From: Lepidodermella squamata
Lineage: Eukaryota > Animalia > Gastrotricha
Reading direction: 5' to 3'
Assembly (NCBI GenBank): GCA_047495785.1
Contig: JBLDXI010000074.1
Location: forward strand, 434,001 to 498,000
Length of the DNA: 64,000 bases
Under the pieces are notes generated by a model. It did not search any database. It worked only from the letters and a program-made list of their open reading frames with translations, and was not told the DNA's origin. The position numbers and the translations under genes were made by a program. This document shows positions 27,182-63,233 of the stretch, one piece after another (within the stretch, counting starts at the first letter, position 1; each line of letters starts with the position of its first letter).

Positions 27182-27195
27182 ATAATTGCAAGCCA

Positions 27196-27251
27196 AATAT
27201 AAATAAAAATAAATAAATAATAAATAAAATAATAATAAAAAATAAATAAAA
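27196..27251 (+). repeat. (TAAA)n/A-rich tract, probable 3' tail of the outermost LINE
   Basis: The A-rich simple repeat ends exactly where the duplicated host exon resumes. Confidence 0.6.
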
Positions 27252-29268: not shown

Positions 29269-29961
29269 GCACATTTTCCGGCCCGCCGGTGTTTCCTCTG
29301 CGCGCGCGCTCCTATTGGTTGGGGCGTATTGCGCAACAATTCAAGATAATTATAGCCTACCCCGTGCGCCCGTGCGCTGAGTCTAAGACAAGCATGTCGA
29401 AGAAAAATTAAAAGCCCATCCATAAAAATCCTTGAAGATCATCCTTCTGGTGATAATCGGGCTGTATTGTTGATAATCGACAACAAAATTGACTGCATCG
29501 TGGCGGTCTACACGTCCTTATTTGATGACTTACCATTTCGTATGGAAAATCGCCGGCTATGAGCAATTAAGACGTTGATTTAAGAAAGAGGATGCGATGG
29601 CTTTTTCGAAGAACATGCTTATTTATGAAAAATTATTGACGTTTAAACCGCTAGAAATTGCTATTTCGGGCGGACTATTTTAGGCTATTTTAAGGTGATG
29701 TTCCGGGACAAATTATGTTCAAATTTAAAATCAACCGGAAATACCCTTGAAAAAGCGACAAAAAACCGAAAATTTTGCCTTTCATTCCACGGATATCAAC
29801 CCCTAGTGCGGCGTTATTCTGAATTTTGGAATTGTACGCGCGAGGGAAGGCTGCGATCATTTATTGCGCAATAAATGCGAGGGAGGCGTATTTATGCGTA
29901 AAACGAGCCAACCAATAGGAGCGCGCGCGCGGAGGAAACACCGGCGGGCCGGAAAATGTGC
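29269..29961. mobile_element. Non-autonomous TIR element with 6-bp TSD (superfamily unassigned)
   Basis: ~55-bp TIR gcacattttccggcccgccggtgtttcctc... TSD TTCGTC at 29263-68 and 29962-67. The empty site is visible at about 56571. Confidence 0.9.
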
Positions 29962-32715
29962 TTCGTCAGGAAAGAATTTCAGAGCGAATCCCTCGTTGGG
30001 AACAACAGTCATCTGCACATGGGCATCTCAGTACGCGAAAGTCGGGTTGCAGAAAGTTTGCTGTGATTCTCGCGAATTTTTCTCATGTCATTCGAACAGC
30101 ATCAGGGTTGAATCAGGGTTGCGGTTCATTGAAAGCTGCGATCACTTCGAGCTGCTCAAGCAGATTCATTACTCCTTCAATGCGAGAAAGCGGCTAGAAA
30201 ATGCCAAGTTTCGCGTTCGTCAGCACGGCGTCTCCAGCAGGTAGCCCACGGTTTAAGGGTCAAGTCGGCTCGAAAACATCAACAATAAAAGATTCGCCAA
30301 ATTTGTTCTTTAATTTTCAAATTTTCGATGTTGCAATTTTAGCAGCCCGGGCTGCTATAGGATCAAATACGGTATAGACAAAAAAACATGCTTTACGAAT
30401 AAAATTAGAAAAATCAAGGCGTCGGCGCAGCTCTGAAAAGGGCGTTATTTTTTTATATGGGAGTACTAAGCACACTCATTATGCTTATATTACGTCTATT
30501 ATTTTGAGTTAGCTGTGATAAAGTTTCGATTTTTTTCGAGGAATATGTAGCTCCAGGTCTGCTCTAATAGAAGCACGAAAAAAATTATGGTACAGCCGTG
30601 GTTAAATTTAAGATAATTTTACTTTAATGACATTGGAAAATCCTATTTTGCCTCGTTTTGCTGTTAATTTCAGATTGAATCCCTTTTATATCCATGTCAA
30701 ATTGCTATGGTGACTCATTCGGCCTGAATATGCGATGGTTTTAGACGAATCTGCCTGATTGCTTAAAAATACCTGATTTTGCCACGAAATGCCGCTATTA
30801 ATTTCGTCTAAATGCCAAAATTCGGCAGATTTATCCTTAAACACACTGCGCATTTTATTATGCACTTATAATACTAAACGAGTACTCCGCGCATAATATA
30901 GGCCCATGTGCGGTGCTCATAATAATAAAGAAGTACGCATGGTTAGGACTAGGGTGATTTGGAAGCTTTTATTGCAATACATAGCACGGTGACACCTATT
31001 TTTTTGTGACTTTTCTTAGGGACCGGATGGTCTACTTTTCCAAGAAGAAAAAATATGCTGGTGCAACCATGGTTTTTTTTAAAGATATTCTAGCCTCTAA
31101 GAAAGTTTTGAATAAGTGAACTCAAAAATTATGGTTCTTAAGGCCCCTATGTTAAAATCGGCCAGGATGTATAAACAGAATTTATTTGTTTTTCCCTGAG
31201 ATCTAGTCGTGAAACATGAATTCAGGTGAGAAAAGCACTGTGTTACCATTGATTTTCACCGCAAGTTTATGGCTAGAGTCCTATGGGAAAATCGTTACTT
31301 GACCTTTTGTCGGGTTTCCTTATAAACGAATGCATTAACACGATGTATCATCATCATTATCAAATATTAGATATTAACTCTATGCAAGTGGATTTGCAAC
31401 TCATCTTATGTTGTTTCAGAAGTTTGAGTTTTTTCCTGCACATTTTCATAGCATAAATGCCGTTACACAGCATGATTGAAAGAATTGGCGGTAAAAATCC
31501 ATGGTGACATAACGTTTTCATTTGCGTAAATTACTCTCCTCGGCACATTTTAAGATTAAAACTCAAAAAATTATGGAAAAGTCCAGCTAGATTTCAAGAA
31601 AAACGACCGTAATGACAATCTCAAACGAGTTTTCCTGTGTTTCACAACACTAAGGGAAGTACTGTGGCAGACAACCCGCGGTGACGTCATTTTTGCTGTC
31701 ACCAAAATGTCCTTCTCGACCTGCTAAAATATTTAAACCGAAGAGCATTAATGACGGCCATCTTTAGAATTCGAAAAGAATGGCGCAATCCCAGGCAGCC
31801 ATGCATTTTCCATGCAGGCCCACACGTTATACCATTATTATACGCGCGCGTAGTACACAGACTATATTAAGGACGCATGCAGCAGAATCCTCATATTGTA
31901 TGAATAATAATAATAATACATTGTGCATTTTTATTCACAATTTAGGGATCTCGACGTCAAATATTACTCTTTTATGTAGTTTTCCTGTCATTTCCTGATG
32001 TAGGACAGGAGTTAATGACTGTATCTGTTTACTAATTCAGGGAGTCTTTAACACTTTAACTGCCAAAAATAGACTGCGAGGTCCGATATTTGGGTCTAAT
32101 TCCTGGGTCTGTCAAAAAGTCATTTTTTTCGGGTCAACGATGCGTCGAGGGGCAAAATGCCTGACGGCAAAGTGTAGGCCATGACCTGGCGGTTCTTTTG
32201 ACACCGATTTCGGGGCCACAAGGTCTCAGCAGGTCATTGAAAATGACAGTGAAATAACGTCGAAATTTTGGATTAGAGCCAAAAATCAGACCCAAGAATT
32301 GGACCTAATTATTAGACCCAGATTATGGCGCAACAATCGAAATTTCACTGTTTTTCAAGTTTGATTTCTGTGCGTTCCTTGATGTCTTTGGCTCCAAATT
32401 TGGTGTCAAAAGAACCGCCAGGTCATGGATTCGATGATTTCTTACGCCGGATAGCAACCTTCGTAATTCCGGTCTTTGGCTGCGCTTCGGGCCAGCATAA
32501 CCAGCATTCAGGCCGATATCCATCGTGCTATCCCCCTGAATATTGTATGTTATCCGGATTTGATGATTTTTGACGCCGGATAACAACCATATCCGGGTGT
32601 CATCGGTGGACAGCGATGGATATTCGTCCTTCAGGCCACTATTCCGGCCTTCGGCTGCGCCTCGGGCCTACATAGCGAGCCTTCAGGCCAATATCCATCG
32701 TGCTATATCCACTCG

Positions 32716-45762: not shown

Positions 45763-48700
45763 TCATTTTTTACCGATCGGAATTTTTCCGGGTTTTTTCG
45801 GTATTTTTTCTTTGATGCCGAATTTCGCACATAAATCAGGGTCGCGTAACGACGGTATCGGCTGACGTTCGAAGCCGTGCGTGACCAACGGTAGATAATA
45901 GCTGAAATTTCGATCGATGATGCTGCTAGCGTCCACTGATGCTTGATTGTCGCCGAAAGTCCAAATCATAGCCAGACTGGTGCGAACAATGCCGAGAAAA
46001 ATTGCGATTTGGAGCAGAAAGAAAATACCTATAACGGAAAATTTTGCGATTATTTGATAGATAACCACATAATCACACATTTAGCCTATTGTTGGTACTA
46101 AATAACTATTTAAATAACCTGATGGTAATATTTTCGGTATTTTCGGATTTTTTGTGAATTTTTTAGTAGTTTTTGCCACTGAAATAGGCAGTTGACCTCA
46201 GTTGGCATCCCTACCATTTTATTGGCTTCAATGGATTTAAAATGCGAATATGGCTAAAATTTTATAATTTCCTTACCCAACATGATGTGCATTCCGAACA
46301 GAGTTTGAAAATCATGCATGTTCAGCTCGGTTCCATTGGTTAAATTCGGCGCGAACGTGGTCGGAAATGCCGTAGTAGTCCCATTAGTAACCGAATTATT
46401 CCCGAAAATCCCAAACCTAGCCACAATTTGGTTCAAACCCGCATTAGCCAGCCGTTCCTCAGCAATATGAACCTGCTCTACATTTCCCTGCAAGTCGAAG
46501 AAATCGGCCAAAGTCGCGAGCCTGAGCGCTAGAAAGGCGATGTATAAATAAATCGCAAAAACGACAACTTGAACAGCCGTGAACGTAACACCCGGCATTT
46601 GATACGAGTCGTAAATTGTCGTCATCGCGTTGAAAATGTGCGTAATCTCGGCGTTGAGCAACGCAGATTCCACATCGCTATCCAGCATTTTCATGAGACG
46701 AGCTTGCTGAATGAGGCTCGTGCACCATATAAATGGCTTGGCGTAGTAGGCCTGCGTTAGTTGGCTCGATTTACCGAGGCGTTTCGTGAAGTCATGGTTC
46801 ACTGATTCCAGCGCGGCTAGTTCTTCATAGCTCAGCAATTTGTGCTTTTTGACCAGTGATCGGTAGTTCGGGAATCGTTCGGCTACGGGCGATGAGAATC
46901 GCGTGAAAGCCAACGCCATGCCAATGCAGAGATATCTAAAATTTGATAATGCAAATTTGAGAAAATCATAAATGAATAAAACCCTTCAACAATTTGAGAT
47001 TTAATTACCAAAATAATTTAACCTAAATTTCAGAAAATTATTTCCGTTTATTCAATCATAATTCAATTCAAATAATTCAAAATCGAAATTTTTTGTGAAT
47101 CATCTCAAAATATTGGCTGTTGCTCTTGTTTGCACTATCGCCGCAAGCACATGTCTTGTTTTCAAGTTGGTACTATCTGTTCGAGAGAGAATGGGGCGCA
47201 ACAACCCGTTCCGTCATCTCGCATGGGCGAAACTCGATCCGACCTTATCTCGACAACGAACGACTACATTGGCCTTTCTATTTTACGCGAACGAGCTGCA
47301 AAAGGTTCCGACACGAACTGCGTCTGCAATTCCACGGAGTCGGAAAGGCCCTGTTGCAATTTCAATCGGGCAAGTAACAATTGCACAATACACTGGAAAA
47401 AATTAATCCCTGATCAGGGGTCAGCTGTTTAAACCGTTTTACTGATCAGCATGAAAACGGGACAACCCCTGATAATCGCAGACGCCAGCTGATAATCCAT
47501 GCCATTTTCATGCTGATCAGCATCACTTTGCTGATCAGGGGTCAAAAGTGTGCATTCGCTAATTAACCAAGTGTGCATATGCAAATTAGGCTGCATGTTC
47601 AATTCAGACTTGCGTCGGAAGGTCCATATTTTCGAAAAAGCCAATTTTTTCACACGCGAACTCTATTACTTCAGCTGTTTACTTAGCAATAAGTCCTTCT
47701 TTTTCTAACAAGTGACTACCAAGTGCCATCATGAGTTCCTGCCATGTTTAGGTAGTTGCCGTGCCCGGTGGCATAGCATACTACCGAGCCGGCACTACCT
47801 GCATGGCATTAGGTTTGGCGGATTCTGGTCAACCGGCTATTCAAAAAGAATAATATAAAAATAAAACTGAAAAAGGGCTGCCATTTTTCTAAAAATTTTG
47901 AAATTTTACTAAATTTGCTGATCAGCAGCTGATCAGGGCGCTATAAGTGATTATTATCAGCAAATATTGGAACCAAAATGACCCCTCATCAGGCTGAGCT
48001 GATTAGGGTTCACTTCAATATAACCCCTGATCAGGGTGCATATTACCCCCTGATCAGCTATAGTAATGACTAGGAGCTATGACCCCTGATCAGACCCCTT
48101 ATCAGGGGTTAATTTTTTCTAGTGTACAATAACCCGAAGTGGAAAATTCACGGTCAGCGCTACGTCGCTGTGAATAACCCAAACTCGGCCATCGAGCACC
48201 CCTGAAGCACCCGAACAATTCACACACCTTGATCCACTCAAGTGTTTAGGGCCGTGTCCAAGGATGAACGAAAATATGTTCTTTCTGGCCGAAATCGATA
48301 GAAGTCAAAGTGTGGCTAATCGCGTTTTCATTCTTCAAACGCTGTGAAGAAAAGTGAAAAGTGTCCCACATGCAGCAAGCTACCTAAAGCGGAGAGTGGT
48401 TAAATCAATTGTGTCAATAAATGAGGCATCCACGGCCCAGTTTTCTCAGTGGGTTTTACTTGTGCATGTGGACAGCTCAGTCATAAGAGGTCCATCCGTA
48501 TTAGATAAAGCGGTTAAGGCGTGCATCGAGGAGATAGGTCCGTGTTACTTCTGCAAGGCGTGCTTCGGCAGCCGCGAGCCGTGGCCTTATTAATATATGC
48601 GGGTTGGGCATTACATCGATTTTGAACAACAGCGCTGCCTCTTTGCATAACCGGATAACAACTCTAAAACAGCTACATACTACTAAAAGGCCCTCGTCAG

Positions 48701-50942
48701 GGCTGCAAATGGTCTTCCGAGTCACAAGCCGATGCCGATTGTCACAACGCGCAGCTCCACGCGGATTTATTTCGACGCGTTGGCAACAGCCAACAACCGA
48801 ATTTTGCACTTATTTCAACCGCTGGTTCGACATTTTCAACTTCTAAAATGAATTCGATTTTTTCCGCTACGACCACGACGCCAAGTCATTCACTTCTAGT
48901 ACTAGTACCTGCTCTGGCTTTATGACCTCGCATCGTGTTTCGATTACATCTTGCTTGATGATTACAACGCGGATCTCCTAGCTAAATCATGTGTGCTAAA
49001 TCATGTATTAACTGCGGATACAGTCAGCGGTTGCCACGATCTGACGCTAGCTTAGAAGGATGGCATTTCGCAATTCAGGCTTTACGTGGCAATCATCCTC
49101 AGTGTTTTATGTTTTCGTCGAGCGTCTGCGAAATGAAGCGAAATGGGCGAATCAAGCTGAATGACAGGACTGCAATGTCGTGGGCCGAAATGTCATACGA
49201 CGCCCTAAAATCAGTCGAATGGGTAACTGGTTAATTGGTCCCACCCTTGGCCCATTTATCGAAACGTTGCGCAGGGCAACTGCGGACAACTAAAAAATCT
49301 CCATTGGATAAGGTCCAGTTTCTAAGCGTGATTAAGACGGAAGAGCTACGAACTCCTCAGTGCTTGCAAACAATCAAGGATTTCATACCTAAAACTGACG
49401 TTTACGTTGGCGGGAAGTTGTTCGGGCTAAAGATCGGGCCCGATTTCACCATCAAGGACGATGCACGGCTCGAGAAGCTATTCCCATATCGGCATAGCAT
49501 GCAGTTCGCGAATGTTTCCGATCTTTACCAAGCTCCAAAGCCAGTGAGAAACATCAACGTTGCTGCCTTGATTTCGCATGTTACGATTGGAAATCAGGTG
49601 TAGGGCTAATATCGGGAAAAACGTCGCCCCAACTTATGTAAGCAATCGAATTTCGAAATTGACATTGGCGGACAAATTGTCAAAAATTCTTAATAATTCG
49701 CTTCTCGACTTCGTTTTCAAGCTGAAATATGACTTCACTGCATCTGAAACTCTCCGCCTGTTTTGTCATCGACTACATCAGCAATACTGTTAAAAAATTA
49801 CTTCAGCATTTTCTGGGCGGTTTCTCGACATTGTTTTTCAACGAAATTTTCAAAAATGTGCTGTCAACCCACAATCGATGCATGAGGCAAGCTTCTCTCG
49901 GCATTAGCTCCTTGTGAGCCCTTCGGTATAAAATCATTTCAGTATTTGGTGGCTGAGCTGGGCTGATCGTCAAATGATCGCGAATTTACCGCATGAATAC
50001 ATCGTGCCAACGTTTTTGTTCTTCGTTCTGTAAATTCGTCTCTGTCGCAGCGCTTGGAACATTCGTGTGAAAGCAAAACTGTGGTCTATTACTTTGTGCC
50101 AAACTAAAATCTAACACTGAATTCTGTGAATTGTACGATTGTTCTCGTTGATTTACCATGTCCGATGTTCGTTGATTTTTCACATTCTATTTTTCACTAG
50201 AATACGAGAAAAGGCGAGAAAAGGAATCCAATATCTTTTTAGTAATTGGCGCATTGGTGCTTTTCACATCGATGAACTTGGTTTGGAAAGTTGGTAACAC
50301 CCTGCGTTCGTGAACTTCTGTTCGTGTATTCTACCGCTAACTATTATCGATTTCTCAACTATTTTCTGAATTTTCAATCTCATCCGCCTTATGTTTTCGG
50401 AATTTTCAATCAAAACCACAAAATTATGCCATTAGGAGAAAAATGTAATGCAAACCTGTGAATTGCCGTGCGAATGTCTTTCGCCGTTTTGAATTTGCTG
50501 TCGAATTTTCGCCGCTTGCATTCCTCCTCACTCGACGCCGGCGGGTCGTGAATATAGGCCTCGAGCAGAAATGCCATTCTGTCGGGAAACGGCAGTAAGT
50601 TGAACGTTTTCAGGTTCTTGCTAACCACGCTGTTGATGAACAGCGCCACAACAAATTCGATAGCAACAGTTAATTTGTATCGCAAAAACGTCTTAAAAAT
50701 AGAATTTTTAATTAAAAATTAGGTTGGCTGATAAAAATAACCTCGCCCATGTTGTTCATAAATTCGTGACTTTCGCCCGTTAGGCCGAAGTGGTACAAGC
50801 AGGAGAGACCAGTGTAGAGAAGGGCGAAGAGCAAGAAATCGGGAATTATCAATCGATAAAACGATCGACGCCATCGCAGCAAAAATCGAAGGGAAAACCA
50901 ACCTCTTGTTGCTAAACGATAACTACTACGAGGAGGCGCCAT
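45763..50942 (-). CDS. Divergent bestrophin-family channel; exons 50942-50742, 50691-50456, 46935-46277, 46028-45763
   Basis: FLLRWRRSFYRL, PFPDRMA, IRTAIHRYL, VAERFP (RFP motif), KPFIW, QVVVFAIYLY, FFLLQ..FLG and FG....IIDRN. All three introns are GT-AG and phase-consistent. Confidence 0.88.
47391..48124. mobile_element. CACT...AGTG non-autonomous element with ctgatcag repeats, in bestrophin intron 2
   Basis: TIR cactggaaaaaattaatccctgat / atcaggggttaattttttctagtg with TA on both flanks. Confidence 0.75.
48350..49603 (+). mobile_element. Degenerate MULE-like transposase remnant
   Basis: RLPRSDASLEGWHFAI..NHP resembles the MULE RTNN.xEGWH motif. Multiple stops and frameshifts. Confidence 0.45.
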
Positions 50943-51109
50943 TTTTAGAAAAAAAGAAAACAATAAACGAGAAATTTTGAAAATCAAATTCAAGGTGGAT
51001 TTTTTCAATTTTTCAATAATTTATTGCGCACTCACACAATTGATAAATTTTGGAAAAGATTTTAACACATGAAAACGAGGGAATATCTTTCTTCTCAATT
51101 CTTTCGATT

Positions 51110-54100
51110 TTAGGGCTTGGTAGGAATGAGACCCTTCGAGTACAAGTAGCTCCGGTTGCCTTCGTAATAGGCGGCGACTTCCTGCGGCGACATGGCGTGG
51201 TCGCAGAGTAGCACTTCGTCGATGGAACCGGTGAAAGAGCCCAGGTGATGATCGAAGCCGATTGTGTACGGCGTGTTGACCAACGGAAGGCGGCCGTGAG
51301 CTTCTTCATAACCAATCACAGCCTAAAAAGGTCCATGGATGAATTAAAAATAATTTAGAAAAAACCAAATCGATAAACTAATTAAAACAAATTCCAAGTA
51401 GTTAGAAAACTTGTCCCGAAAATTTCAAATATTTTGAAATCGCTTCAAAATTTCCCGAAAATTTGCGCTGAGCTCAAAATCCCCTGTCCGGACCTGCCGA
51501 TTCAGCATCCATGGGTATCAATTTTTTTCACATTTCAAGCGAATTTCAAGGGTCAATTATTAATATTTCAAGCGTATAACTTACTCCATTTAAATAAAGT
51601 TCCACGTTGGCACCGTCGTAAACCAGGCAAATCTGGTTCCACTCTTCAGTTCCATTGGTAGCGCCCGTAATCGTGACCAGCATAGTCGGGTTATTCAGCC
51701 TCATTTTCGCCACAATCTGGTTCTTCGTAACCGTGGCTAGAACCACCGAAAACGCGTTGTCCTTCCCGTTCGACAACAGGCCACCAGATCGCAGGCACTC
51801 GTTGGAACCCGGGCGCTGCTGGCACCGGTAGAAAAGGCACCACGAGGCCTGGTTCTTCTGATCTGAACCAGCCAGGCCGGGCACTTCGAGGTAAGCACCG
51901 CCGCCCAACAGAAGAGACCGACCTTCACCAACTGCAGAATCGTTGGCTTTGTTCAAAATTGGCCGGCCATGCGGGTAGATACTGAATCGATTTGTCGATA
52001 GGTCGGAGATGTCCTCGTTGAAGGGAACATAGAGACGGCATTGACGGCCTTTCACGTACTGGTTAGGCTTGTGTTGCTCGTTGCGAATTCCTTCACCTAA
52101 AATGAATTAAAATCATGCATTAAACTGTTACGCAACTAACTGAAAGGGGCCAGAAAGCCAAGTCTAGTTTTTCAAGTTCAATCCCAAAATTCGACTGAAA
52201 CTGGTCACTGTTCATATCAACGTCAGGTTGTCCAAAAAAAGCGGCCGTCCTACTTAAGCTCAGCGGGCTCTGCACATGCAAAATGTGGAAAAGGCACCGA
52301 GCCCTGATCGCGAGTCGTTGGACAGTGATATTGGTGACACGGGTGGTGAGCGACTCGAGCAACAAGATGATGATTTCGAAGGTTTGGTCGACCCCGCACC
52401 GGAGCTTTTTCGTACTCGAGTGAGCCGTTCACTGGTCCAACAACCACTGAGAACGACTGAGCGACGGCGCCAAAACCACGCCGGGGAAGGCCGCCGCTGA
52501 CCCGAAGCATGTCAGCAGTTCCGCCCACGACCACGGCGACATCAAAACCGCAACGAGGACGAAAATTATTTTCATTTAAATTTCATGAATTCATGATTTA
52601 ATGTTTTGATGAATAAAATTTGGTTCCGCTGAAATAAGGCCCTTATTTGTGGACGAATATAACAACCTTATAAATTAAGCAAAAAAACCTAAAAAAATAC
52701 CTTCAGGCAGATGCTCACAGCGGCACGATTTGAGCGAGAACAGCGAGCCACCAGCACATGGAATCGTGTAGTAGCGAGGAGCATCGGTATCGACGAATTC
52801 GATGACATCGAAGAGGTCAGGCCGGCCGCGGTGAAGGCGAAGCGTGTTGTTGTAGATGTCAACGCATTTCTCATCGGCTTCCAGCGCCGCATTCTCCAGC
52901 TGTTTCGTCACATCGGCGACCGTGCACTTGTCCTCGCATTTCGACGCACCCTCGTGGTGCTGCTCTGTTTCGGCCATGCAACTGCATGAATCAGCCTAAA
53001 ATTGAGGAAAAAATAGGGAATTTAACGTCTCTGCACACACTTTCTCAAAAAAACTGATTGGGATTTCGATACGAGCCTCTATATTCTTCTATGAATAGGA
53101 ATTTCGAATACCAGGTGAAATCAGGCCAATCCAGTAGGACACTGGGTGAGCAAAAAAAGTCGTCGAGCGTGATGGCAAATTTGGAGATCGATTCGAAGGG
53201 CCATTCGAAGTCATTGAAATCTTTCCAGACAATCCTAACATCGTCAAACTTCGACTTAGCGAGACAGAAAGCGACACGTTTAACGTATCCAAAATCGACC
53301 CATGGAAAACTCAACCAGAGCACAGCTAATCAGAGTCCGTCGCTGAGTCCATCTTGCCACACTTTTTAAAGGGCCTTACTTTTACAGCCGACATAAATAA
53401 TTATTGAGGCGGAATTTAATAGAATTTATTTTAAATTTGATAAAATTCTAGTTTGTATTCATAATAAAGTTTTTTCGGTGTAGACATTTTCTTCTCGATG
53501 CCGACCTTGTTTCAAGCGCTTCGAGGCCGGCCAAGTTGGTTGGAGCCAGTGCTCGAGATGCTACTTTTGGTACTGTAGCAAGAAGTGCTTCGCCCAGCAT
53601 ATACATAGCCGCAGCTCAAACGAATTTGTAGCCGCAAAAACTAATCAAGCTTTCTTCTGTGCTGATGTGATCTTATGACTTGTGACAATATTGGTGATCA
53701 TCGACCAAGTTGGCATCAACTTATACTGCTGCGCGTGCCACTTCTATTGCTACCGATTCGCATGGTCTACGCTTTTACGAAAAGGTTGCGCAGCTGAAAG
53801 ACGCCAACATCAGGTGCTGCCTTACTGAGCAGTTGAAGCTAATGGAAAGCGGCTCCGGCAACTTGGCTCCGCTATACAACAAGGGGACCTGTAACCCAAA
53901 GTTGGATACGCTAAAGTCTTGCGCAGCAAAGGTCGACGACATTGGTTGTACGGAGAGTCTTTATTCTCCAGCCTAATGCAAAACAACTGTTCAACTGGTT
54001 TACCGAACCATCGGTAGAAATAGATACAACGCCTATTCTTTCAGTTATTTACACAAATTTTCGCCTGAAAACTGGTTTGAAACATTAAACGCATGCTCGT

Positions 54101-57100
54101 TTTTCGCACCGGGATTCGCACCGGGCGGGGCAACAACACCCGGATGTCGACGGTGCCTCCAGGTGTCCCTGAATCTGGGTCAAAATCTGATGTCCCTTAA
54201 CCAGGACAGAAGACAACGGGGTTAAAAACGTGTCACGAGTGCGGCAGGCCGGCAGGCAGTGTGCGAAGCGGCGAGCAAAGACAACGTGCCACAACTGTTT
54301 CACGCTCGGGCATTACGCCGACGAATGTCAAGCTCCAAGAAAGCCGCCAAAAAAACTTCAGACCACGCCAACAGATGACTATCTCAATTGGCCAGCAGTC
54401 GCTCGGGCCGTGGCTGAGTGGGATGGCCGCGCCATTCATGCAACCGGCGTTCAACCGCGCTATGCGTAAGTATATTTGGCAATTTTTGGCAATCGATCTG
54501 TCCCAATCAAGGAAGAAATGAAATGTTTGAAGAGCGTTGTAGATGCGACTATTATGCATGGCAGCGAAAGTTGGACTGTAACTTCTGAGGATGCGAGGCG
54601 ACTAGATGTTGGCTATATGCGGTATTTGCGGAAAATATGCGGCGTGACACTTAGAGACAGGATTAGCAATGAGGCCGTTAGAAATATGAGTAGCACGGAA
54701 CAATTTACATTCAAAATCGCTAGGCGCCAACTTCGCTGGTATGGACACATCGCTCGCATGGCTGGCGAGCCTGATGCGGTACTGGCAGCCGCCGGATGAT
54801 ACTTGGAGTAGACCTCAAGGGCGACCAAAATTAAGGTGGATCGATTGTATTAAAATACATCCGAACAAAATAGGGATTACAAATTTTGAGGAGGCCGACG
54901 CCCTGGCCCGGGATAGAACTACTTGGCGACAAAAAATGCATAGTTATTTTGGGAAATTTAAAATTAGATTCTAATCATTATAACACGTTTTTTGAGGTGA
55001 GTGATCAGGATAGGTACCTTGCTACCAGTCCTCCTCTGACACTCGGTGCGCTTGGCGTGAATTTGATTATACCGTCACCCCGGGGCCCCGGCGAACTGGC
55101 TACACCGGAAAGATTTTTATTTTATCATGTTTCCTTCGCATTTTCTATAAACTTTGTTCATATTTGTTGAATATTGTTGACTAATAATATGAAGGAAAAG
55201 ATGAAATAAGGATAATGCTATGCTCCTTTTTATAGCAAGTCCCGTTTACAACACCCCTTTTAAAAAGCTATGAGACTATATCCAAGGCCCCATACTCTTT
55301 TATAACAGAAAATACGATAGGACGGGGTGCTCTACAAAAAGAAAAGAGAAAAAATTTACGTCAAATCGAGTTCCAGCCGGGCAGCATTTCGCGTACGAAG
55401 TTCCATACGAGCACAGGAAAAACATGGCGCAATTGCTGCGAATTCCATAGCACCCGTTGTGGGTCACGTGGTTATGCCGGCAGTAGTCAGAACACGGCAT
55501 CGGGCCTTCCGGGACGCAAACGTGCGCATCCTTATTGAACACCTCCAACGGACCACACGACTTCACAACACCGGAAATGTTTTTCAGATTCGAAAAATCA
55601 CACTCGACGTAACTGTGGCAGTTATCGGGCAGCGGGACGGCGCGGAAACCGGCTTTAACCACCTTGCTGTAGTGGCAGACATCGGTGGGGGTGACGCGTT
55701 CCAACTGCCGGGCCAGGCCGGTTTTAACGTGGTTACGGCGGAAGGGCGTGGTCGGCGGCACGTAAGGCTTCTGCGTCATCATAGCCAGGTAATTCGGCTT
55801 CAAATCCTGACTCCGGTGATTCGCGTGGTGGTCAGGGTTCGGCTGGGAAACAACGGGAGGCGCGTAGTTTTCCATGCAGAGCAGCGCGGTGATTTCGGGG
55901 AATTTGTTGAACTCGACGCCGGATTCGATCGGGTAGAAGAGATCGCGGCGGCTGGCGAGGTTTCGCGCGATTTCGTGCGAGTAGCCGTGGCCGAGGCCGA
56001 ATTTCAGCAGGTTGATGTTGGCGCTTTTCAGCCGGTCGGCTTTGACGAGGGCTCGCGGCGGGTTCTTCGGGTCTTTGCTCATGAACACCAGGACGTAGGT
56101 CGGGCTGGCCGAGCGGCGACCACGGGTCGGCGTCAAAACCTGAAATAAGCAGAGATAAAATTAATTTACTGTTTTTTTATTGAATTTCACAATAAATTTC
56201 AAATTTTATATTTACAGCTTCAACTTTTTGAAATTAATCATAATATTATCACCAAAATAAATGAAAAATTTAAGATTATTCTCTCGCTAACCAACAAATT
56301 TTCTGGCTTCAACTGTTGGGATGCTAATTTCCCAAGTCGATTTTTTGAAGAAAAAGCTATCCGTTAAAAAGGGAGTTTCGCCGTGGAAAAGACCACCAGC
56401 TGTTCAAGCCGTGTTGTCCGAGGATCGGCATCGCTTTTAATGTAAATTATCAAAGAGTTCGACTCGAAAAATGACCAATCTTAGTCTCTCGTTTCACGAG
56501 CACCATTCCAAACGAATGAGTGGGGTGGTTTCATCGGCGCACGAATGTAGTTGGCACGGTCACCACTATTTTCGTCAGGAACGAATTTCAGAGCGAAATT
56601 GGGAACAAAAGTCATCTGCACATGGGCATCTCAGTACGCGAAATTCGGGCGGAACTGGTTTTTGCGGTTGGTTGAAAGTCGAGATCACTTCGAGATGCTC
56701 AAGGAAATTCATTAGCCCTTCCAACGGCACGAATGCGAGAAAGCGGCTGGAAAATGCCAGTTCCTCGCGGCGAAGGGTTTGACGCGTTCGCCAGCACGGC
56801 GTCTCCAGCACCAATTATTTCGAAGAGTACCGCAACCTCTATTCCGAGGAAACTTGCAAAGAGCTGCAATCGCTGACCAAGCCATCATCGCGGCAATATG
56901 ATAGACGGCTCGAACAACTTTACTTTAAAATGTGCGATTGAAGGTTTAGTGTCGTACTTTGACAAATTACTCTGCCAGCTCTGGCGTTCGCCCCAAAGCC
57001 TACGCGGCATCGACAGACGTTCCGGGGCAAGCAGCCGCTAAATGATGTAACAAACTATAGCTTTTTTCCTACAGCTACTCTTACGCTGGCAATAAATTGC

Positions 57101-57976
57101 TTCTGACCTCGCCGATAATTGAACGAAGTGACCCAGATAAATGACCCACGTGTTAGCGAGCAATTTTATTGCCCAGCCGCTCTACTACTAATAGTGCTTC
57201 CCATAAGTAACGCAATTAAAGAAAATACACGGAAAAGAGATAACTAAAAAATGAGAGGCAAAGCCATGCCTGCCTGCCTGGCCAGAAAAATCTTAAAAAA
57301 TTCAAATGCCATCATGAGATTAGTAATCAATGGGATTAAAAAACTGCTGGAGAAATTTGGCCCAACCGGGTAAATAGCGGAAATTACTAACCCAGCTACA
57401 AGCAAGGTTTTCCGGGTTTTCTCCGGTGAATTTTTATTTCAAATAAATTTGCCGATTTTCCTACAACAATTTGCAAACTTGAAAAATTGTCTCGCATGGG
57501 ATACGCTGTAATAAAATCTAAATAAAAAGCCGAAAAGTAATGTGAATTACCTGAGACATGATTCCTTCCAGCGTGTCTGACAGGAAAGACTGCGAGCCAA
57601 GCGAGTTAGCACCCGGGATGTAATTGCGGATGAAGCCGCGAACAGAGTCGGACGATTTATGGTCACCCAGCAGCGATCGAATGTGAACCGACGACGCGTA
57701 TTCAATGATGGAAACGCGCATGTCAGCGCACGAATTCAGCGATTCAAAAATGCCGTCAACGATCGGCTTGATCGTGTCAGCGTAGTTGTCTTTGCTTACA
57801 TAGCTACGGTCAATAGCGACGACGATATCGGGAGCACAGCATGATTTAGCGGTGCTTTTCGCATTTTCGACGTTGACGATAGGTTCAGCAGGTTTGGCGT
57901 GTTCCGGTGCTTGGTGGTGCTGGTGATGATCGGCAGTGACCAGCGTTATTAATAAGGCTTGAATGAGAAGTCGCAT
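51110..57976 (-). CDS. Gene B: secreted Pif/BMSP-like protein (signal peptide, His-rich segment, VWA, chitin-binding type-2 domains, LamG/ConA-like); exons 57976-57551, 56139-55360, 52995-52701, 52096-51585, 51322-51110
   Basis: MRLLIQALLITLVTA signal peptide, DIVVAIDRS..VSIIEYAS VWA, DNCHSYVEC and SNCAMFFLC..CCPAGTRFD CBM14-like repeats, and LYVPFNED..WNQICLVYDG..LYLNG..FTGSIDEV LamG. Four phase-consistent GT-AG introns. Confidence 0.88.
53150..53320 (+). mobile_element. Ty3/gypsy integrase C-terminal (GPF/Y module) fragment in intron
   Basis: A frame not in the ORF track reads KFGDRFEGPFEVIEIFPDNPNIVKLRL...FNVSKIDPW. Confidence 0.6.
54230..54400 (+). mobile_element. Gag-like zinc knuckle remnant
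   Basis: CHNCFTLGHYADEC (CX2CX4HX4C). Confidence 0.5.
54450..54960 (+). mobile_element. Degenerate RTE-clade LINE 3' fragment (different family)
   Basis: HGSESWT, YLRKICGV..DRISNE, QLRWYGHIARM, RPQGRPKLRWID and ARDRTTWR, with frameshifts. Confidence 0.85.
57192..57509. mobile_element. Tc1/mariner-like MITE; partial related copy at about 60010-60290
   Basis: Both copies share cccataagtaacgcaa and atgggattaaaaaa...ttccgggttt blocks. The terminus tgggatacgctgta is the inverse of tacagcgtgtccca. Confidence 0.55.
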
Positions 57977-58953
57977 GATTTGGCTTTATTTCAAAGAAAT
58001 CACATCGATCGTTTTTACAACGGCGGCGTTGAAAATTGTCGCCGTCCATTCATGCTTCGAAGTTGAGCGCGTGTTCACATTGGTGGCACGTGGATGGAAA
58101 ATGAACGAACGCGAGCAAATAATAAATTGCGCAACATCAGAGATCACGTGACTTTCTCAGAACTAAGTGACTTCTAGAGTAAACAGTAGACAGAAAATCA
58201 TTGCTCAGCTCAGAATTTCTTGGTTAGACAGAAAATTGAAATAATTAGCGAGATAACAAGAAATGTCGCGTTTTATAGGTCAACGAGCTTTTACCCGCCA
58301 AAGTTAGGCAAACACCATTTCGATTGTCAAAAATCAGGAAATAATTACAAAAAATATTCTTAAAATTTGGAGGAAATTCAGGAGTGACCTTGCCCACCTT
58401 TTCTTCAAATTTCACGAATTTTCCCATCAAAAGCTCATTAGAAACCCAAGTTTTCTCCAAATTTATTCTTCGTTATGGCGAGCGCTGCATAGCTCATTGG
58501 TTCTCACTCTGAGAAACAAGCGGATGTGGGCAAATGGCTGCTCCTCTTTTCCAGGCCCGATGAATATAGATTTCGGATATGGATTCATATAATTTATTCC
58601 TTTTACTATTTCAGTTCCAGTAACAATAAACATAGGACTTTGGTAAATCTGTGATAAATGATCTTGATTATTGGTTTCATTATTTTCCAAAATTCCTTAG
58701 GTCCCAACTCGAGCGGATTTGTCCACGAACAATGGCTTTCCTAGGTCAAAAACGATGAACTCAATGACATCAAGATGCCAAAATTCTACTGCGCACCCTT
58801 TGTTGACCTTGGCAGAGCATTCATACATGCGGAAAAATGTCACCTGTTTAAACTTCAAACGAACGAAATAGCTGTTGTCATAGGCAGCAGCAGGTTCAGT
58901 AATTTAATTTTTCATCAAAAAAGTACTTCAGTTCTTTTGGGAAAAATAATAAA

Positions 58954-59245
58954 ATGATGAATTTCAAAGTTGCTATCATTCTGGCGGCTATTCTCAGCGT
59001 CACGTTCGCGCAGAATGGTGAAACTATAAGACTTCCCTAAATTCAATGCGATAACATTCTCAAATCCAACAGGTCGTCCCACAGGAACCAACGGCGGTGG
59101 TGTCAATGGCGGAGGATCAGCAGGCACTGGAGGCTCAATTTCTCAGACCGGAAACGGAGCTTCAGTCCCCAACGGTGGTTCTAGCGGCACTGCACCTTCA
59201 CAGCCTACGGCTGGAAATGGAGGCACTAGAAATGGCGGTCGTTGA
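58954..59245 (+). CDS. Small secreted Gly/Asn/Ser/Thr-rich peptide (78 aa), two exons 58954-59017 and 59073-59245
   Basis: MMNFKVAIILAAILSVTFA|QNGRPTGTNGGGVNGGGSAGTGGSISQTGNGASVPNGGSSGTAPSQPTAGNGGTRNGGR*. A 55-nt phase-1 GT-AG intron follows the signal-peptide exon. AATAAA at 59367-72. Confidence 0.8.
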
Positions 59246-59413
59246 AGCAATTTCCACTTCAAAAAGAGGAGAGACACATCTAAAAAAATGTTGAGGGGTT
59301 CGAGAAGTTTCTTTGAGCGATCTGCATAATTTTATTTCGTAATTTTCAATAACTTCTCAAAATATAAATAAATAAATATATTTCTCTCATGCAATTCATT
59401 CAAAAGAGTGTTA

Positions 59414-62400
59414 TCAAACAGCAGCTGGTAAGATTCCTTTGTCAATTAGCGCTTGGTTATCACCGTTGAAGTGAGCGTCGATTTCATCCTGCGCCATTGG
59501 ATGCGCAGTCATGATAACATTGTCGATTGAACCAATGAATTGGCCGTAAGTTGGGTCAGCACCGATACGGTAATCACATTGGCCCAGAGCCAATTGGTAC
59601 CCAGTGAGCTGCGCACTATCCGCTTGGCGCTGTAATAAATAAAGGCTATAGAAATATTTCGAAGGATCCGAAAAACTAACCCCATTAACGTAGAGCTTCG
59701 CAGTTCCAGCAGAGTAGATAACGCAAGTCTGGGTCCAATTGCTGTTGCCATCAGAAATAGGTCCAGTTAGGGTAACAGATTCGCCTGAAATCGATCGAAG
59801 AACAGCTACGGTATCGGAACCATTGGTAACCGCGATGATAATAGTAGAGATGGTAGAAGTGCTGTCGAGGTTGTTGGAAATCAAACCACCGCTAGTGCAG
59901 GTAGATGCGTCTCCAGAATCCGAAGCACATCTATAACAAAAGATTCCATGTAACAGGTTAAATGTGGAAAAGGGTAAAAGATGGGAAAAGGGCTTGATGC
60001 CATGGTTATACAGCGTGTCCCATAAGTAACGCAAAGGTTATGGAACGAAAAGGGTTCAGAAAATGATAAACGAAGTCAGTCACATCTCAAGGCCAGTAAT
60101 TAAAAAATTTCAAATACCAGATTTTTTATTAAAAATGCAAAAAAATCACGAGAATAGTAATCGAGTAAGTCACTTGATATGGGATTAAAAAAAATCCGAA
60201 TAAATTTGGTTCAACGGGGTAAAATACCGAAAATTACCGAACCAGTTACCATCGGGTATTTCCGGGTTTACTTCGGTAATTTCTTTATTGAACAAATGAA
60301 CAAATGAACAAATGAAAATGTTTTATTTTACGTCCACCTTCGGCTAAAGTGATGGTAATATATATATAAGCCTTACCCGTGAGGGTTTAGGGGACGGCTG
60401 ACGACGAGAGATCAGCTTCAGGAACAGTCGCGAACAATCTGCTTTTTCCCATGAATTCATAATTTTCTATACTGTTACATAGTAGCTGCCATTATTCCCG
60501 GTCTCTAGCTGTTACTTCCGCCAATTCTAAATCCGCTGGCGGCCTGCCGCGAGGATAATTTCTTTATTTTTCCGGTTAAATCTGGAATTTTCTCTCGGTA
60601 TGTTTAATTTGAAAAAAATTGAATTCCTGGCAAAAAAGTTGCCAAATTAATTCTTTTTCTTCTGGGTCACGCTGTAGGAAGGTAACTAACCTGAAAAAGA
60701 GGCACCAAGATCCTTGATCGCGGAAGTCGTGATTTTTGAGGCCGGGAACATCAATCTGTCCACCACTGAACACCGCAGAATTCGAACTATTCCCAACTTC
60801 ACTACCCTCACCATCGCCAAGCGACACATTCTGGCAAACAAAGGTCGAAAAATGTTGGACAGAATGGTCGTTGAAGTCGGTATCGAACGGCAAATACAAC
60901 AGAGCCTGGTGGCCACTCGCGAAATTCGGCGCAACAACCGGCCCGCCTGACTCGCAACGGCACGAAGATACGTCAAACTGCGTCAACGGAGGGCAGGCCA
61001 ACGAAATCACCCTAGCGCCGAGATAGATCAAATACCGACCCGAGAAGCCGTTGTAGCTACCCAGCGTATTGTTGTATTGGTCAATGCAAACCGTATCATT
61101 CACTCGAATCGTAGCTACGGTCGTCACATTAACGGACTGCTGCGTCGGGGAGACGCAAGTTGCCGAGCAGGCCACCTCGTACCTACAACTGCAGGACGTA
61201 GCGTCGAAGCCAGTTTCAGGCGGGCAGCACTGCTGGTAGCTAGCCCCGTTCGCGCACGTGAAAAACTCGGCGCAGTTCGTCGGCGAGGCGTAGCAATGCG
61301 CCTGATTCGAGTTGTACAGCGTTTGGTTCATGCAAACGTCCGTGCAGGGCGTCGGGCCCTCTGGGATGCATGTCGAGATGTAAGGGTAGAAGAAGGTACC
61401 GGGCGGGCATTGATTGCGAAGACCGACAGCCCGATTGCCGCCGAAGTACATGCATTGGAAGAACGAGTGGCAGTCGTCTGGGTTAGCGTACAGCCCGCTT
61501 TGGTGGCACGTATCGCGGCACTGGAAGCAGAATTCGTTGGCTTGCGTGTCGTTCAGCGGGACGGCACCGCCGACCAAACCAATTTCCGAGACCGTGGTTG
61601 TCGAGGTTGAAGTGGATTCTGTCGAAGTAGACGTGGTGGAGGTCGATTCCGTAGTGGTGGTTGTAGTTTCCGGAGTTGTGGTCTCAGTGGTTGTCGTTGG
61701 GGTTGAAGTCGTAGTGCTTTCTGTGGTGGTCGAGGGGGTTGAAGTTGAAGTGGTCGATTCCGTAGTAGTAGTGGTCTCGGTGCTCGTCGACGTGGTTTCA
61801 GGGGTCGTCGTAGTACTTTCTGTGGAGGTAGTCGTAGTCTCAGTGGTTGTCGTAGGGGTCGAAGTCGTAGTGCTCTCTGTTGTGGTCGAAGGGGTTGAAG
61901 TTGAAGTGGTAGATTCTGTAGAGGTGGTTGTGGTTTCAGGGGTCGTCGTAGTAGATTCTGTCGACGTGGTAGTAGTAGGGGTTGAAGTCGTAGTGGATTC
62001 CGTAGTAGTAGTGCTCTCGGTACTCGTCGAGGTAGTTTCAGGGGTCGTCGTGGTACTTTCTGTTGAGGTGGTCGTAGTCTCCGTGGTCGTCGTAGGGGTC
62101 GAAGTGGAAGTCGATTCCGTAGAGGTAGTTGTGGTCTCTGTAGTCGTAGTCGACTCAGTAGTGGTGGTCGGAGTTGTGGTCTCAGTGGTTGTCGTGCTTT
62201 CTGTCGTGGTCGAAGGCGTTGAAGTTGTAGTCGACTCTGTGGTAGTTGAAGAGGAGGTCGGATATGTAGACGTCAAAAGGCTAGGGCAATTCGGGCAAAT
62301 CTCCATCAGCAGCTCCGGCGTAGGGTCATACCACTCGGTAACATTGGTCGAATTCGTCGCCGGGATGAAGTAAATCGGCTTGCTAGCCAGCGGTTGGACA

Positions 62401-63233
62401 TAGCTCTTGTTGTACCCCTCGCCAAAGCCAATGACCACAACCGGAATGCCATGCGATTTCAGCTCACCAGCTTCTTCCATCGCGTCCTCCTGGCTTGACG
62501 GGGTGCTGCCTGTCATCAGGACAACGAGAACAGGTGCCTTGCGACGGTGGCCCCTCTTCGGAGCCAACACCTGGTACCGAACAGCCTCCAGCGCATCTCC
62601 CGCCTGCGATTCACTGCCGAGATCAGTTGTTGGGTAGTAACTCATCAAAGCCTGTCGCGATAACTCGTTCGAACTCGCGTTTTCGATCAAATACTTCGGG
62701 ATAAACACAAAAGACGCGTATTCAATGACAGCAGTTCGAAGGTTCATGCAAGACGGCAGATGGTCGTTCAAAACGTGGTTCATCGTCGGCCGGCCAATAG
62801 CGTTGTAGGTTGCGTTGTCGAAGTACGACCGATCGATAACGAAAATTATATCGACAGAACAGCAGTAGGTCACAGTTTGCGGGACCACGGCTACGACTGG
62901 CGGTGCCGTAGTGCTGGTCGTCGTTGTTGAGGTTGACGTCGACGATGATGAGGTCAAGTTTTGCGAGCAGAAGCACGAAATCATCCAGTGTGCGATTTCG
63001 TCGCTGTTCGAATTCGCGTCGACCGCTTTGTACCTGTCGGGCGAACTGGCGAGGGATTTGTAGTAGTAAGAGTCGTACATGTTGCCGATGCCGATCATTG
63101 AAATGACACCGCCAGCCATGCGCAGGTTTTCAGCTTCTTGAATGGCGCGATTTTGGAAGTCGGGATTGAAGCAGGAGAACACGTAGACTTGGGTCGGGTT
63201 GTTCAAAGACCGGCTTTGAACATCTCGCAATAC
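59414..63233 (-). CDS. Gene A (5'-partial): BMSP/Pif-like protein with at least two VWA domains, a Thr-rich mucin tract, chitin-binding domains and LamG; exons 63233-60691, 59930-59681, 59629-59414
   Basis: DIIFVIDRS..AVIEYAS VWA, DDCHSFFQC..CPPGTFF and TNCAEFFTC..CCPPETGFD, and LYLPFDTD..WTQTCVIY..LYVNG..FIGSIDNV. It is paralogous to gene B and shares two intron positions. Upstream exons lie beyond the window. Confidence 0.9.
61590..62270 (-). repeat. Coding low-complexity Thr/Ser/Glu/Pro tandem repeat (~225 aa, mucin-like)
   Basis: Repeated TTTESTTT / TPETT / STPS units with synonymous variation. Confidence 0.9.

What the first reader, a model, noticed from the sequence alone, without database searches (positions are those of the whole stretch)
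45763..63233. Candidate chitin-matrix / biomineralisation gene cluster: two Pif/BMSP-like genes, a secreted Gly-Asn peptide and an atypical bestrophin
Seen: gene A and gene B (both VWA + chitin-binding + LamG) flank a small secreted G/N-rich peptide gene. Gene B is followed 167 bp after its stop by the ATG of a bestrophin. Established: the VWA-CBM14-LamG architecture defines the molluscan shell-matrix Pif/BMSP family, Gly-rich low-complexity secreted proteins are typical matrix components, and bestrophins conduct Cl- and HCO3-. Inference: this may be a co-regulated module supplying both an organic scaffold and anion/pH control for a chitinous or mineralised extracellular structure. I do not know of such a physical linkage being described.
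Basis: partly seen in the sequence, partly recalled or inferred. Interest (0 to 1): 0.75.

Follow-up and report, generated by a model that had tools for sequence, protein, structure and literature searches.

The report
Chitin-matrix gene array beside odd bestrophin
A small invertebrate has a row of genes for secreted, chitin-binding, mucin-like matrix proteins built like mollusc shell proteins, with a very divergent chloride/bicarbonate channel gene right behind them, but nothing I could test shows that channel and matrix genes work together or that any mineral is involved.

Summary
The sequence features are real. Pfam finds VWA, CBM_14 and Laminin_G_3 in both matrix genes and Bestrophin in the next gene. 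The bestrophin ATG lies 167 bp after gene B's stop. The coordinates need correcting:
- Gene A starts about 8.4 kb beyond the window and has about six VWA units plus Thr/Ser mucin linkers.
- A third, 9-VWA paralogue lies upstream of gene A.
- The Gly/Asn-rich peptide gene is on the opposite strand and has no other copy in the genome.

The matrix proteins share the Pif/BMSP domain order. They lack the cleavage site and the charged mineral-binding tail of Pif80/BMSP100.

The bestrophin is intact (4 exons, 453 codons) and under purifying selection. It keeps a hydrophobic neck but has lost the acidic Ca2+-clasp (DNQAS instead of EDDDD). Only one relative cluster turned up among 1.84 billion representative proteins.

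A functional module is not shown:
- Short same-strand spacers (167-254 bp) are the rule at this locus.
- The genome has at least 23 CBM14-LamG3 loci, and the other bestrophin loci (about ten genes) have no listed CBM14 or LamG3 match within 100 kb.
- The B-bestrophin pair recurs only as a decaying segmental duplicate.
- Synteny and expression could not be tested.

Earlier scan notes had already flagged Pif-like genes elsewhere in this genome.

The parts
60691..63233 (-). Gene A, large exon: C-terminal half of VWA unit 5, complete VWA unit 6, Thr/Ser-rich mucin-like repeat region of about 250 residues, two CBM_14 domains, a third Cys-rich CB-like domain and the start of Laminin_G_3. The gene's 5' exons lie outside the window, up to the ATG at window coordinate 71673.
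   Evidence: Pfam VWA E 9.6e-18 and CBM_14 E 3.6e-9. Splice sites and frame. Upstream exons.
59414..59930 (-). Gene A, last exon: rest of Laminin_G_3 and the stop codon (59414-59416).
   Evidence: Pfam Laminin_G_3 E 3.8e-6. A 760-nt GT-AG intron joins it in frame to the large exon; only length and stop count were checked.
58954..59017 (+). Small peptide gene, exon 1: ATG and a hydrophobic signal-peptide-like segment.
   Evidence: Sequence read directly. Donor GT at 59018.
59073..59245 (+). Small peptide gene, exon 2: Gly/Asn/Ser/Thr-rich part (20 Gly and 6 Asn in 56 residues) and TGA stop at 59243-59245.
   Evidence: 55-nt intron. Only copy in the genome. No expression or conservation evidence.
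57551..57976 (-). Gene B exon 1: ATG at 57976, signal peptide, His-rich stretch, N-terminal half of the single VWA domain.
   Evidence: Pfam VWA E 4.4e-7. Model.
55360..56139 (-). Gene B exon 2: C-terminal half of VWA, His/Pro-rich linker, two CBM_14 domains.
   Evidence: Pfam CBM_14 E 6.8e-9, two stretches. Model.
52701..52995 (-). Gene B exon 3: Cys-rich CB-like third domain. It has no Pfam hit and is placed opposite the third Cys-rich domain of gene A by position and Cys pattern (my reading; tblastn at E <= 1e-5 gave no cross-match).
   Evidence: 95% identical to the duplicate against 81% for the flanking introns.
51585..52096 (-). Gene B exon 4: Laminin_G_3, N-terminal two thirds.
   Evidence: Pfam Laminin_G_3 E 8.9e-7. 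Model.
51110..51322 (-). Gene B exon 5: end of Laminin_G_3 and TAA stop (51110-51112). The five-exon model has 741 codons, is in frame and has one terminal stop.
51020..51025 (-). AATAAA, the likely poly(A) signal of gene B. It lies 84 nt after B's stop and 77 nt before the bestrophin ATG. There is no AG dinucleotide between it and the ATG.
   Evidence: Sequence read directly.
50742..50942 (-). Bestrophin exon 1 (67 codons): canonical N-terminus.
   Evidence: Pfam Bestrophin E 1.4e-8..
50456..50691 (-). Bestrophin exon 2: pore-neck helix (V/F/L at the positions of human I76/F80/F84) and a clade-specific charged insert of about 17 residues.
   Evidence: profile positions 63-126..
46277..46935 (-). 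Bestrophin exon 3: core helices and a long loop with four N-x-S/T sequons, placed where canonical bestrophins have a short loop between the last two membrane helices.
   Evidence: Pfam E 5.7e-11. Splice sites. Joins exon 2 to reproduce the P0001 sequence pattern. dN/dS 0.18 against the duplicate.
45763..46028 (-). Bestrophin exon 4: last membrane helix, degenerate Ca2+-clasp (FGDNQAS instead of FGEDDDD), TGA stop at 45763-45765. The four-exon model has 453 codons and is in frame.
3733..30239 (-). 5' part of the decayed duplicate of gene B (B'). Fragments of the CBM_14 exon lie at 3733-4067 and 27252-27799, and intron fragments at 29032-29268 and 29962-30239. About 23 kb of nested LINE and copia elements (4068-27251) split the exon. 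The rest of the duplicate, with bestrophin exons 3-4, lies before the window start.
54230..55170 (+). Retroelement-like ORF fragments inside intron 2 of gene B. They resemble the C-terminal tail of the LINE ORF at 8289-11003.
   Evidence: ORF list. No Pfam hit. The resemblance is my reading of the translations.

Best explanation
The finding covers the 3' two thirds of a three-gene, same-strand tandem array (C, A, B) made by local duplication. Each gene encodes a secreted protein with one to nine VWA units, Thr/Ser- or His/Pro-rich linkers, two CBM_14 chitin-binding domains, a third Cys-rich CB-like domain and a C-terminal Laminin_G_3 domain.

Inferred mechanism: the CBM_14 pair binds chitin fibrils. 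The VWA units and the LamG domain make protein-protein or glycan contacts. The O-glycosylated mucin linkers hydrate and space the network. The products would then be organic matrix or mucin-type components of a chitinous extracellular structure such as jaws, egg shell, gut lining or cuticle. They are probably not mineral-binding proteins.

The bestrophin behind gene B is a real, selectively constrained member of a very divergent, lineage-restricted bestrophin clade. It keeps a hydrophobic pore neck but has lost the acidic Ca2+-clasp, so I infer an anion channel whose gating does not depend on Ca2+ in the usual way. It also has an enlarged loop with glycosylation sequons.

I read the bestrophin and the small Gly/Asn-rich peptide gene as neighbours in a tightly packed, same-strand gene row. 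I do not read them as shown partners of the matrix genes.
For: Domains: Pfam results.

Paralogy of A, B and C: A versus C is 53-57% identical over the CBM14-LamG region, and A versus B 33-37%.

Gene models: all use GT-AG introns and stay in frame.

Selection: exons are 92-98% identical to the duplicate while most introns are 61-87% identical (one intron stretch 93%). For gene B the pN/pS is 0.06, with 39 synonymous against 8 non-synonymous changes (P 2e-17). For bestrophin exon 3 dN/dS is 0.18 (P 0.003).

No mineral-binding hallmarks: there is no R-x-K/R-R site between the CB and LG parts, no Asp/Glu-rich stretch, and the stop comes directly after LamG.

Spacers: C to A 254 bp, B to bestrophin 167 bp, bestrophin to the next ORF's first ATG about 238 bp.

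Genome context: there are at least 23 loci with CBM_14 followed by Laminin_G_3. About 12 bestrophin genes sit at four places, and only this one is near such a gene. Upstream of gene C come C2H2 zinc-finger genes.

Bestrophin features. A canonical clasp is kept in the paralogue on contig C13. Only P0001 (35% identity) is related among 1.84e9 representatives.
Against: The B-bestrophin spacer leaves only 77 nt between gene B's AATAAA and the bestrophin ATG. The bestrophin promoter must therefore overlap gene B's 3' end, or the two genes are co-transcribed. That would give some co-regulation.

The segmental duplication carried B and the bestrophin together, and both copies stayed under constraint for a time.

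Mammalian bestrophin-2 supports bicarbonate transport and mucin release in goblet cells (PMC3818177, PMC12866826). A mucin-plus-bestrophin pairing is therefore physiologically sensible.

I have no expression, proteome or cross-species data. The structure these proteins belong to, and the animal itself, remain unidentified.
Confidence: 0.6

Rival explanations
1. Secretory module without mineral. The bestrophin is co-expressed, perhaps co-transcribed, with gene B in the cells that secrete the mucin-like chitin-matrix proteins. It supplies Cl-/HCO3- for unpacking and hydrating them, as bestrophin-2 does for mucin in goblet cells.
For: The spacer is 167 bp, with only 77 nt between the AATAAA and the ATG. 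B and the bestrophin were duplicated as one unit and both were then kept under constraint. Gene A is heavily mucin-like. There is a goblet-cell precedent (PMC3818177, PMC12866826).
Against: Equally short spacers separate unrelated neighbours here. The upstream regions share no k-mer (low power). The ten or so other bestrophin genes and the other 20 or more CBM14-LamG3 loci are not paired. The duplicate has since lost bestrophin exons 1-2 and gene B exon 1. There are no RNA data.
Confidence: 0.17
2. One reading: a calcium-carbonate (or other mineral) biomineralisation toolkit, with Pif/BMSP orthologues as scaffold and the bestrophin delivering bicarbonate.
For: The domain order VWA, CBM_14, LamG is that of the Pif/BMSP family (PMC11291548). 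Bestrophins conduct HCO3- (established knowledge).
Against: There is no Pif80/BMSP100-type cleavage site and no Asp/Lys/Arg-rich crystal-binding region. VWA-CB proteins also occur in unmineralised lophotrochozoans such as nemerteans and phoronids (PMC11291548). No paper in the library links bestrophin with shell matrix proteins. Other agents' notes take the animal for a small, rotifer-like form; from my own knowledge such animals have chitinous but not calcified hard parts. The host is not identified.
Confidence: 0.04
3. Operon-like polycistronic row. Genes B, bestrophin and D (and C-A) are transcribed together simply because the genome packs same-strand genes tightly, with no functional relation, as in many nematode operons.
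For: Five genes lie on one strand with spacers of 167-254 bp, except where the opposite-strand peptide gene sits.
Against: There is no AG, and so no trans-splice acceptor, between gene B's poly(A) signal and the bestrophin ATG. Whether this animal trans-splices at all is unknown to me.
Confidence: 0.12

Closest known systems
Pif / BMSP family of molluscan shell matrix proteins (Pif97/Pif80 of Pinctada fucata; BMSP of Mytilus; PMC11291548)
   Same: Signal peptide, one to several N-terminal VWA domains, CBM_14 plus CBM_14-like domains, and a C-terminal laminin-G (Laminin_G_3) domain, in the same order. There are multi-VWA forms, as in four-VWA BMSP, and local gene-family diversification.
   Different: There is no dibasic cleavage site and no charged low-complexity crystal-binding region. 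Long Thr/Ser mucin linkers sit between the VWA units. There are up to 6 and 9 VWA units. The host is an unidentified small invertebrate, not a mollusc. Membership of the VWA clade that defines the family was not tested.
Peritrophin / invertebrate intestinal mucin type proteins (CBM_14 plus mucin domains)
   Same: Secreted proteins that combine peritrophin-A chitin-binding domains with O-glycosylatable Thr/Ser-rich linkers. This fits a non-mineral chitin matrix.
   Different: Peritrophins lack the VWA array and the C-terminal Laminin_G_3 domain.
Animal bestrophins (BEST1-4; Pfam PF01062)
   Same: All four exons match the Pfam profile over nearly its whole length. The N-terminus and the hydrophobic neck positions are conserved (V/F/L for I76/F80/F84; the human numbering is from my own knowledge).
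   Different: The acidic Ca2+-clasp EDDDD is DNQAS. There is a charged insert of about 17 residues after the P-x-P-D motif, shared with P0001. There is a long loop with four glycosylation sequons before the last helix. Scores are very low: 51 bits for the core, against 117-292 bits for the best exon match of the other bestrophin genes in this genome.
Bestrophin-2 in colonic goblet cells (PMC3818177, PMC12866826)
   Same: It is a bestrophin that works alongside secretion of a gel-forming mucin. That gives a physiological rationale for the rival 'secretory module' reading.
   Different: That link is by co-expression, not gene adjacency. BEST2 has an intact Ca2+-clasp.

Membership tests
Pif/BMSP family | Secreted protein with N-terminal VWA domain(s) | tested here: met
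   Pfam VWA in gene A (E 1e-17; upstream units E 4e-11 and 5e-6) and gene B (E 4e-7). Signal peptides were read from the translations.
Pif/BMSP family | CBM_14 and CBM_14-like domains downstream of VWA | tested here: met
   There are two CBM_14 stretches in each gene and a third Cys-rich domain without a Pfam hit (for gene B placed by position and Cys pattern).
Pif/BMSP family | C-terminal laminin-G / Laminin_G_3 domain | tested here: met
   Laminin_G_3 scores 27.5 bits for gene A and 29.6 + 19.3 bits for gene B, against a cut-off of 27.6. The domain is split over exons, so single-exon scores are borderline.
Pif/BMSP family | VWA domain falls inside the Pif/BMSP clade in a VWA phylogeny (the definition used in PMC11291548) | not tested
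   No mollusc Pif/BMSP sequence could be obtained by reference.
Pif/BMSP family | Cleavage into two chains, with a C-terminal Asp/Lys/Arg-rich CaCO3-binding region (Pif80, BMSP100) | tested here: not met
   There is no R-x-K/R-R site between the CB and LG parts. The maximum is 8 Asp+Glu per 30 residues. The stop codon follows LamG directly.
Pif/BMSP family | Presence in a mineralised matrix proteome | not testable with these tools
   There is no proteome, and the host is unidentified.
Bestrophin (PF01062) | Profile match over the channel core | tested here: met
   The exons match profile positions 15-69, 63-126, 129-252 and 272-322 of 324.
Bestrophin (PF01062) | Hydrophobic neck residues in the second helix | tested here: met
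   The alignment with six canonical bestrophins gives V, F and L at the three neck columns.
Ca2+-activated bestrophins (BEST1-type) | Acidic cluster of the Ca2+-clasp (FGEDDDDFE) | tested here: not met
   This protein has FGDNQASVD. The paralogue on contig C13 keeps FGEDDDDFE.
Trans-spliced operon | Trans-splice acceptor (AG after a pyrimidine tract) between the upstream poly(A) signal and the downstream ATG | tested here: not met
   There is no AG in the 77 nt between the AATAAA and the ATG. The RNA itself was not examined.

The most novel reading that the evidence does not exclude
The clasp-less bestrophin, with its enlarged glycosylated loop, is a dedicated partner of the matrix genes. It would be transcribed from gene B's 3' end or together with gene B in the same secretory cells, and would supply Cl-/HCO3- needed to unpack and assemble mucin-type chitin-matrix proteins. 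That would be a physically linked 'scaffold plus anion' unit in a non-mollusc, a linkage I found described in no paper.
Probability: 0.08. Interest if true: 0.7.

Novelty: new member of a known kind. Interest (0 to 1): 0.3.

Why it matters
The locus shows that the VWA, chitin-binding, laminin-G design known from mollusc shell proteins is present and expanded in a small, apparently unmineralised invertebrate: three linked genes with 1, about 6 and 9 VWA units, and at least 23 CBM14-LamG3 loci in the genome. That supports the view that this design is a general chitin-matrix toolkit later recruited for shells.

The neighbouring bestrophin is a natural variant without the Ca2+-clasp. It could be useful for asking how bestrophin gating depends on that site.

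The proposed matrix-plus-channel module would be interesting, but at present it rests on adjacency alone.

Tried and rejected
1. Relatives of the matrix proteins. Word-index searches with gene A residues 547-884 and with gene B exon 2 found nothing. The Atlas look-up was uninformative.

2. Synteny.
- Two metagenome scans, one with the bestrophin and one with the CBM14-LamG profile, found no relative.
- The genome has no relatives in the genome search.

3. Expression. No protein from this locus is in the big collections: there was no self-hit. I therefore have no RNA evidence either way.

4. Shared promoter motifs among the upstream regions of A, B, the peptide gene and the bestrophin. None of 9 nt or more was shared. 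The test has low power.

5. Host identity. A canonical bestrophin of this genome hits two unnamed metagenome proteins at 57-66% identity, then insects and an annelid at 41-44%. Other agents' guess of a rotifer was neither confirmed nor refuted.

6. Neighbour annotation. The gene downstream of the bestrophin and the ORFs in the 3.5-kb bestrophin intron have no meaningful Pfam hit.

7. Pseudogene reading of the bestrophin. I rejected it because the four-exon model is intact and dN/dS is 0.18.

8. Joined proteins. I did not search or fold any joined (spliced) protein. Exons were searched one by one by reference. In scripts exons were joined only to check frame, length and stop count; one of these checks printed the translation of a rejected join of the peptide gene's two exons.
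Full report
**Setting**

The window is G000:C74:434001-498000 of a 121-Mb animal genome in 151 contigs. It is not human. Introns are mostly short (50-55 nt is common) and all models below use GT-AG. Notes by other agents take the animal for a small, rotifer-like invertebrate. My own test could not settle that. A canonical bestrophin of this genome hits two unnamed metagenome proteins at 57-66% identity, then insects and an annelid at 41-44%.

**What is in the sequence**

All the genes run on the minus strand except the small peptide gene.

*Gene B* (57976 to 51110)
- It has five exons and 741 codons, is in frame and has one terminal stop.
- It encodes a signal peptide, a His-rich stretch, one VWA domain split by an intron, a linker, two CBM_14 domains, a third Cys-rich domain and Laminin_G_3.

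*Gene A*
That base is only the first base of an exon behind a canonical acceptor.
- tblastn and Pfam on the flanking DNA show five more VWA-like units upstream.
- Each unit is split at the same place (…T-V-N-x-x | V-L/M-R-D…) by a phase-0 intron.
- The ATG with a signal peptide is at window coordinate 71673, outside the window.
- Thr/Ser-rich runs of about 20-90 residues link most VWA units, and a run of about 250 residues precedes the CBM_14 pair.

*Gene C*
- Directly upstream, 254 bp from gene A's ATG, ends a third paralogue, gene C, at window coordinates about 71.9-98.9 kb.
- It has many VWA units; an earlier scan note counts nine.
- A and C are 53-57% identical over the CBM14-LamG region, and A and B 33-37%.

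*The peptide gene*
- It lies between A and B on the + strand.
- It has two exons (58954-59017 and 59073-59245) and 78 codons.
- It has a signal-peptide-like start and a Gly/Asn/Ser/Thr-rich body.
- It has no other copy in the genome. I have no evidence that it is expressed or conserved, so I treat it as plausible but unverified.

**The bestrophin**

- The ATG at 50942 lies 167 bp after gene B's stop.
- An AATAAA at 51025-51020 leaves 77 nt before that ATG, with no AG in between.
- My model has four exons: 50942-50742, 50691-50456, 46935-46277 and 46028-45763. The introns are 50, 3520 and 248 nt. The model has 453 codons and is in frame.
- The exon 2/3 junction reproduces the pattern of the only clear relative, P0001.
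- The exons match Pfam Bestrophin over nearly the whole profile, but weakly.

Aligned with six canonical bestrophins:
- The N-terminus and the neck helix are kept. V, F and L stand at the columns of human I76, F80 and F84; that numbering is from my own knowledge.
- A charged insert of about 17 residues follows the P-x-P-D motif and is shared with P0001.
- A long loop with four N-x-S/T sequons precedes the last helix.
- The acidic Ca2+-clasp FGEDDDDFE reads FGDNQASVD.
- A paralogue on contig C13 keeps the canonical clasp.

An exhaustive phmmer search of 1.84 billion representatives found one relative cluster, from an ENA metagenome (35% identity, E 2e-17). Otherwise it found one borderline canonical-bestrophin hit (E 3e-4) and one spurious bacterial repeat protein.

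**A duplicate gives a test of selection**

The segment 44834-56810 recurs at window coordinates -12883 to 30239. The copy is damaged:
- It lacks gene B exon 1 and bestrophin exons 1-2.
- About 23 kb of nested LINE and copia elements sit inside its CBM_14 exon.
- It carries frame-breaking indels.

Exons are still 92-98% identical, while most introns are 61-87% identical (one intron stretch 93%). Gene B exons show 39 synonymous against 8 non-synonymous differences (pN/pS 0.06, P 2e-17). Bestrophin exon 3 shows 8 against 5 (dN/dS 0.18, P 0.003). Both genes are therefore real coding genes under purifying selection, and the second copy decayed only recently.

**Is it a functional module?**

Points in favour:
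- The very short spacer forces the bestrophin promoter to overlap gene B's 3' end, or implies read-through.
- B and the bestrophin were duplicated together.
- Mammalian bestrophin-2 supports mucin release in goblet cells (PMC3818177, PMC12866826).

Points against:
- Spacers of 167-254 bp are the rule in this same-strand row: C to A is 254 bp, and the bestrophin to the next ORF's first ATG is about 238 bp.
- Upstream of gene C lie unrelated C2H2 zinc-finger genes.
- The genome holds at least 23 loci with CBM_14 followed by Laminin_G_3.
- It also holds about 12 bestrophin genes at four places, including an array of eight on contig C29. None of the others has a listed CBM_14 or Laminin_G_3 match within 100 kb.
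- With so many family members, some 'interesting' neighbour is expected by chance.
- The four upstream regions share no motif.

**Is it biomineralisation?**

The domain order is that of Pif/BMSP (PMC11291548). The parts that bind mineral in Pif80/BMSP100 are absent: there is no dibasic cleavage site, no charged low-complexity region, and the stop comes directly after LamG. The same paper notes that VWA-CB proteins are also diverse in unmineralised lophotrochozoans. No paper in the library links bestrophin with shell matrix proteins. The mucin linkers fit a hydrated chitin matrix better than a crystal-binding role.

**What could not be done**

- Two word-index searches and two metagenome scans were blank.
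- Synteny in relatives, expression and a phylogeny with mollusc Pif/BMSP therefore remain open.
Exons were searched singly by reference. In scripts exons were joined only to check frame, length and stop count; one such check printed the translation of a rejected join of the peptide gene's exons.

**Verdict**

This is a real, larger-than-described tandem array of Pif/BMSP-architecture chitin-matrix genes, followed by a real and unusually divergent clasp-less bestrophin. The proposed functional linkage is unproven and, on present evidence, more likely coincidental.

Noticed in passing
window 4068-27251: There is a nest of apparently young retroelements with long intact ORFs: LINE endonuclease and RT ORFs at 4076-4729, 8289-11003 and 16979-19077, and a copia-type element with a 1230-codon pol at 21690-25382 and gag at 25533-26987. 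The nest is inserted exactly inside the CBM_14 exon of the duplicated gene B copy.
   Followed up: partly
window 44834-56810 versus window -12883 to 30239 (contig C74 421118-464239): This segmental duplication carries the 3' four fifths of gene B, the bestrophin and the first ORF of the next gene. The bestrophin exon 3 pair has a much lower dS (0.056) than the gene B exons (0.13-0.19), which could mean gene conversion.
   Followed up: partly
G000:C29:2293486-2313240: This is a tandem array of about eight canonical-looking bestrophin genes. Together with C12, C13 and the two C74 copies, the genome holds about 12 bestrophin genes.
   Followed up: no
G000 contigs C103 (129-154 kb) and C16 (77-102 kb): There are two parallel four-gene arrays of CBM_14 plus Laminin_G_3 genes in alternating orientation, with nearly identical Pfam scores. 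They could be duplicated blocks or two haplotypes. C32:4229674 and C120:3083 also give identical scores.
   Followed up: no
window 45063-45587 and 42576-45226, minus strand: The gene following the bestrophin on the same strand has ORFs without any meaningful Pfam match. Its first ORF is 99% identical to its copy in the duplicate.
   Followed up: partly
VWA units of genes A and B (e.g. window about 62.9 kb and 57.8 kb): The metal-site motif of the VWA units reads D-R-S/Y/L/T-x-F/V instead of D-x-S-x-S. The MIDAS site therefore looks incomplete in all units I read.
   Followed up: no
window 46936-50455: The 3.5-kb second intron of the bestrophin is far longer than the other introns here. It holds + strand ORFs (48989-49603) without a Pfam match. 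Parts of it are missing from the duplicate.
   Followed up: partly
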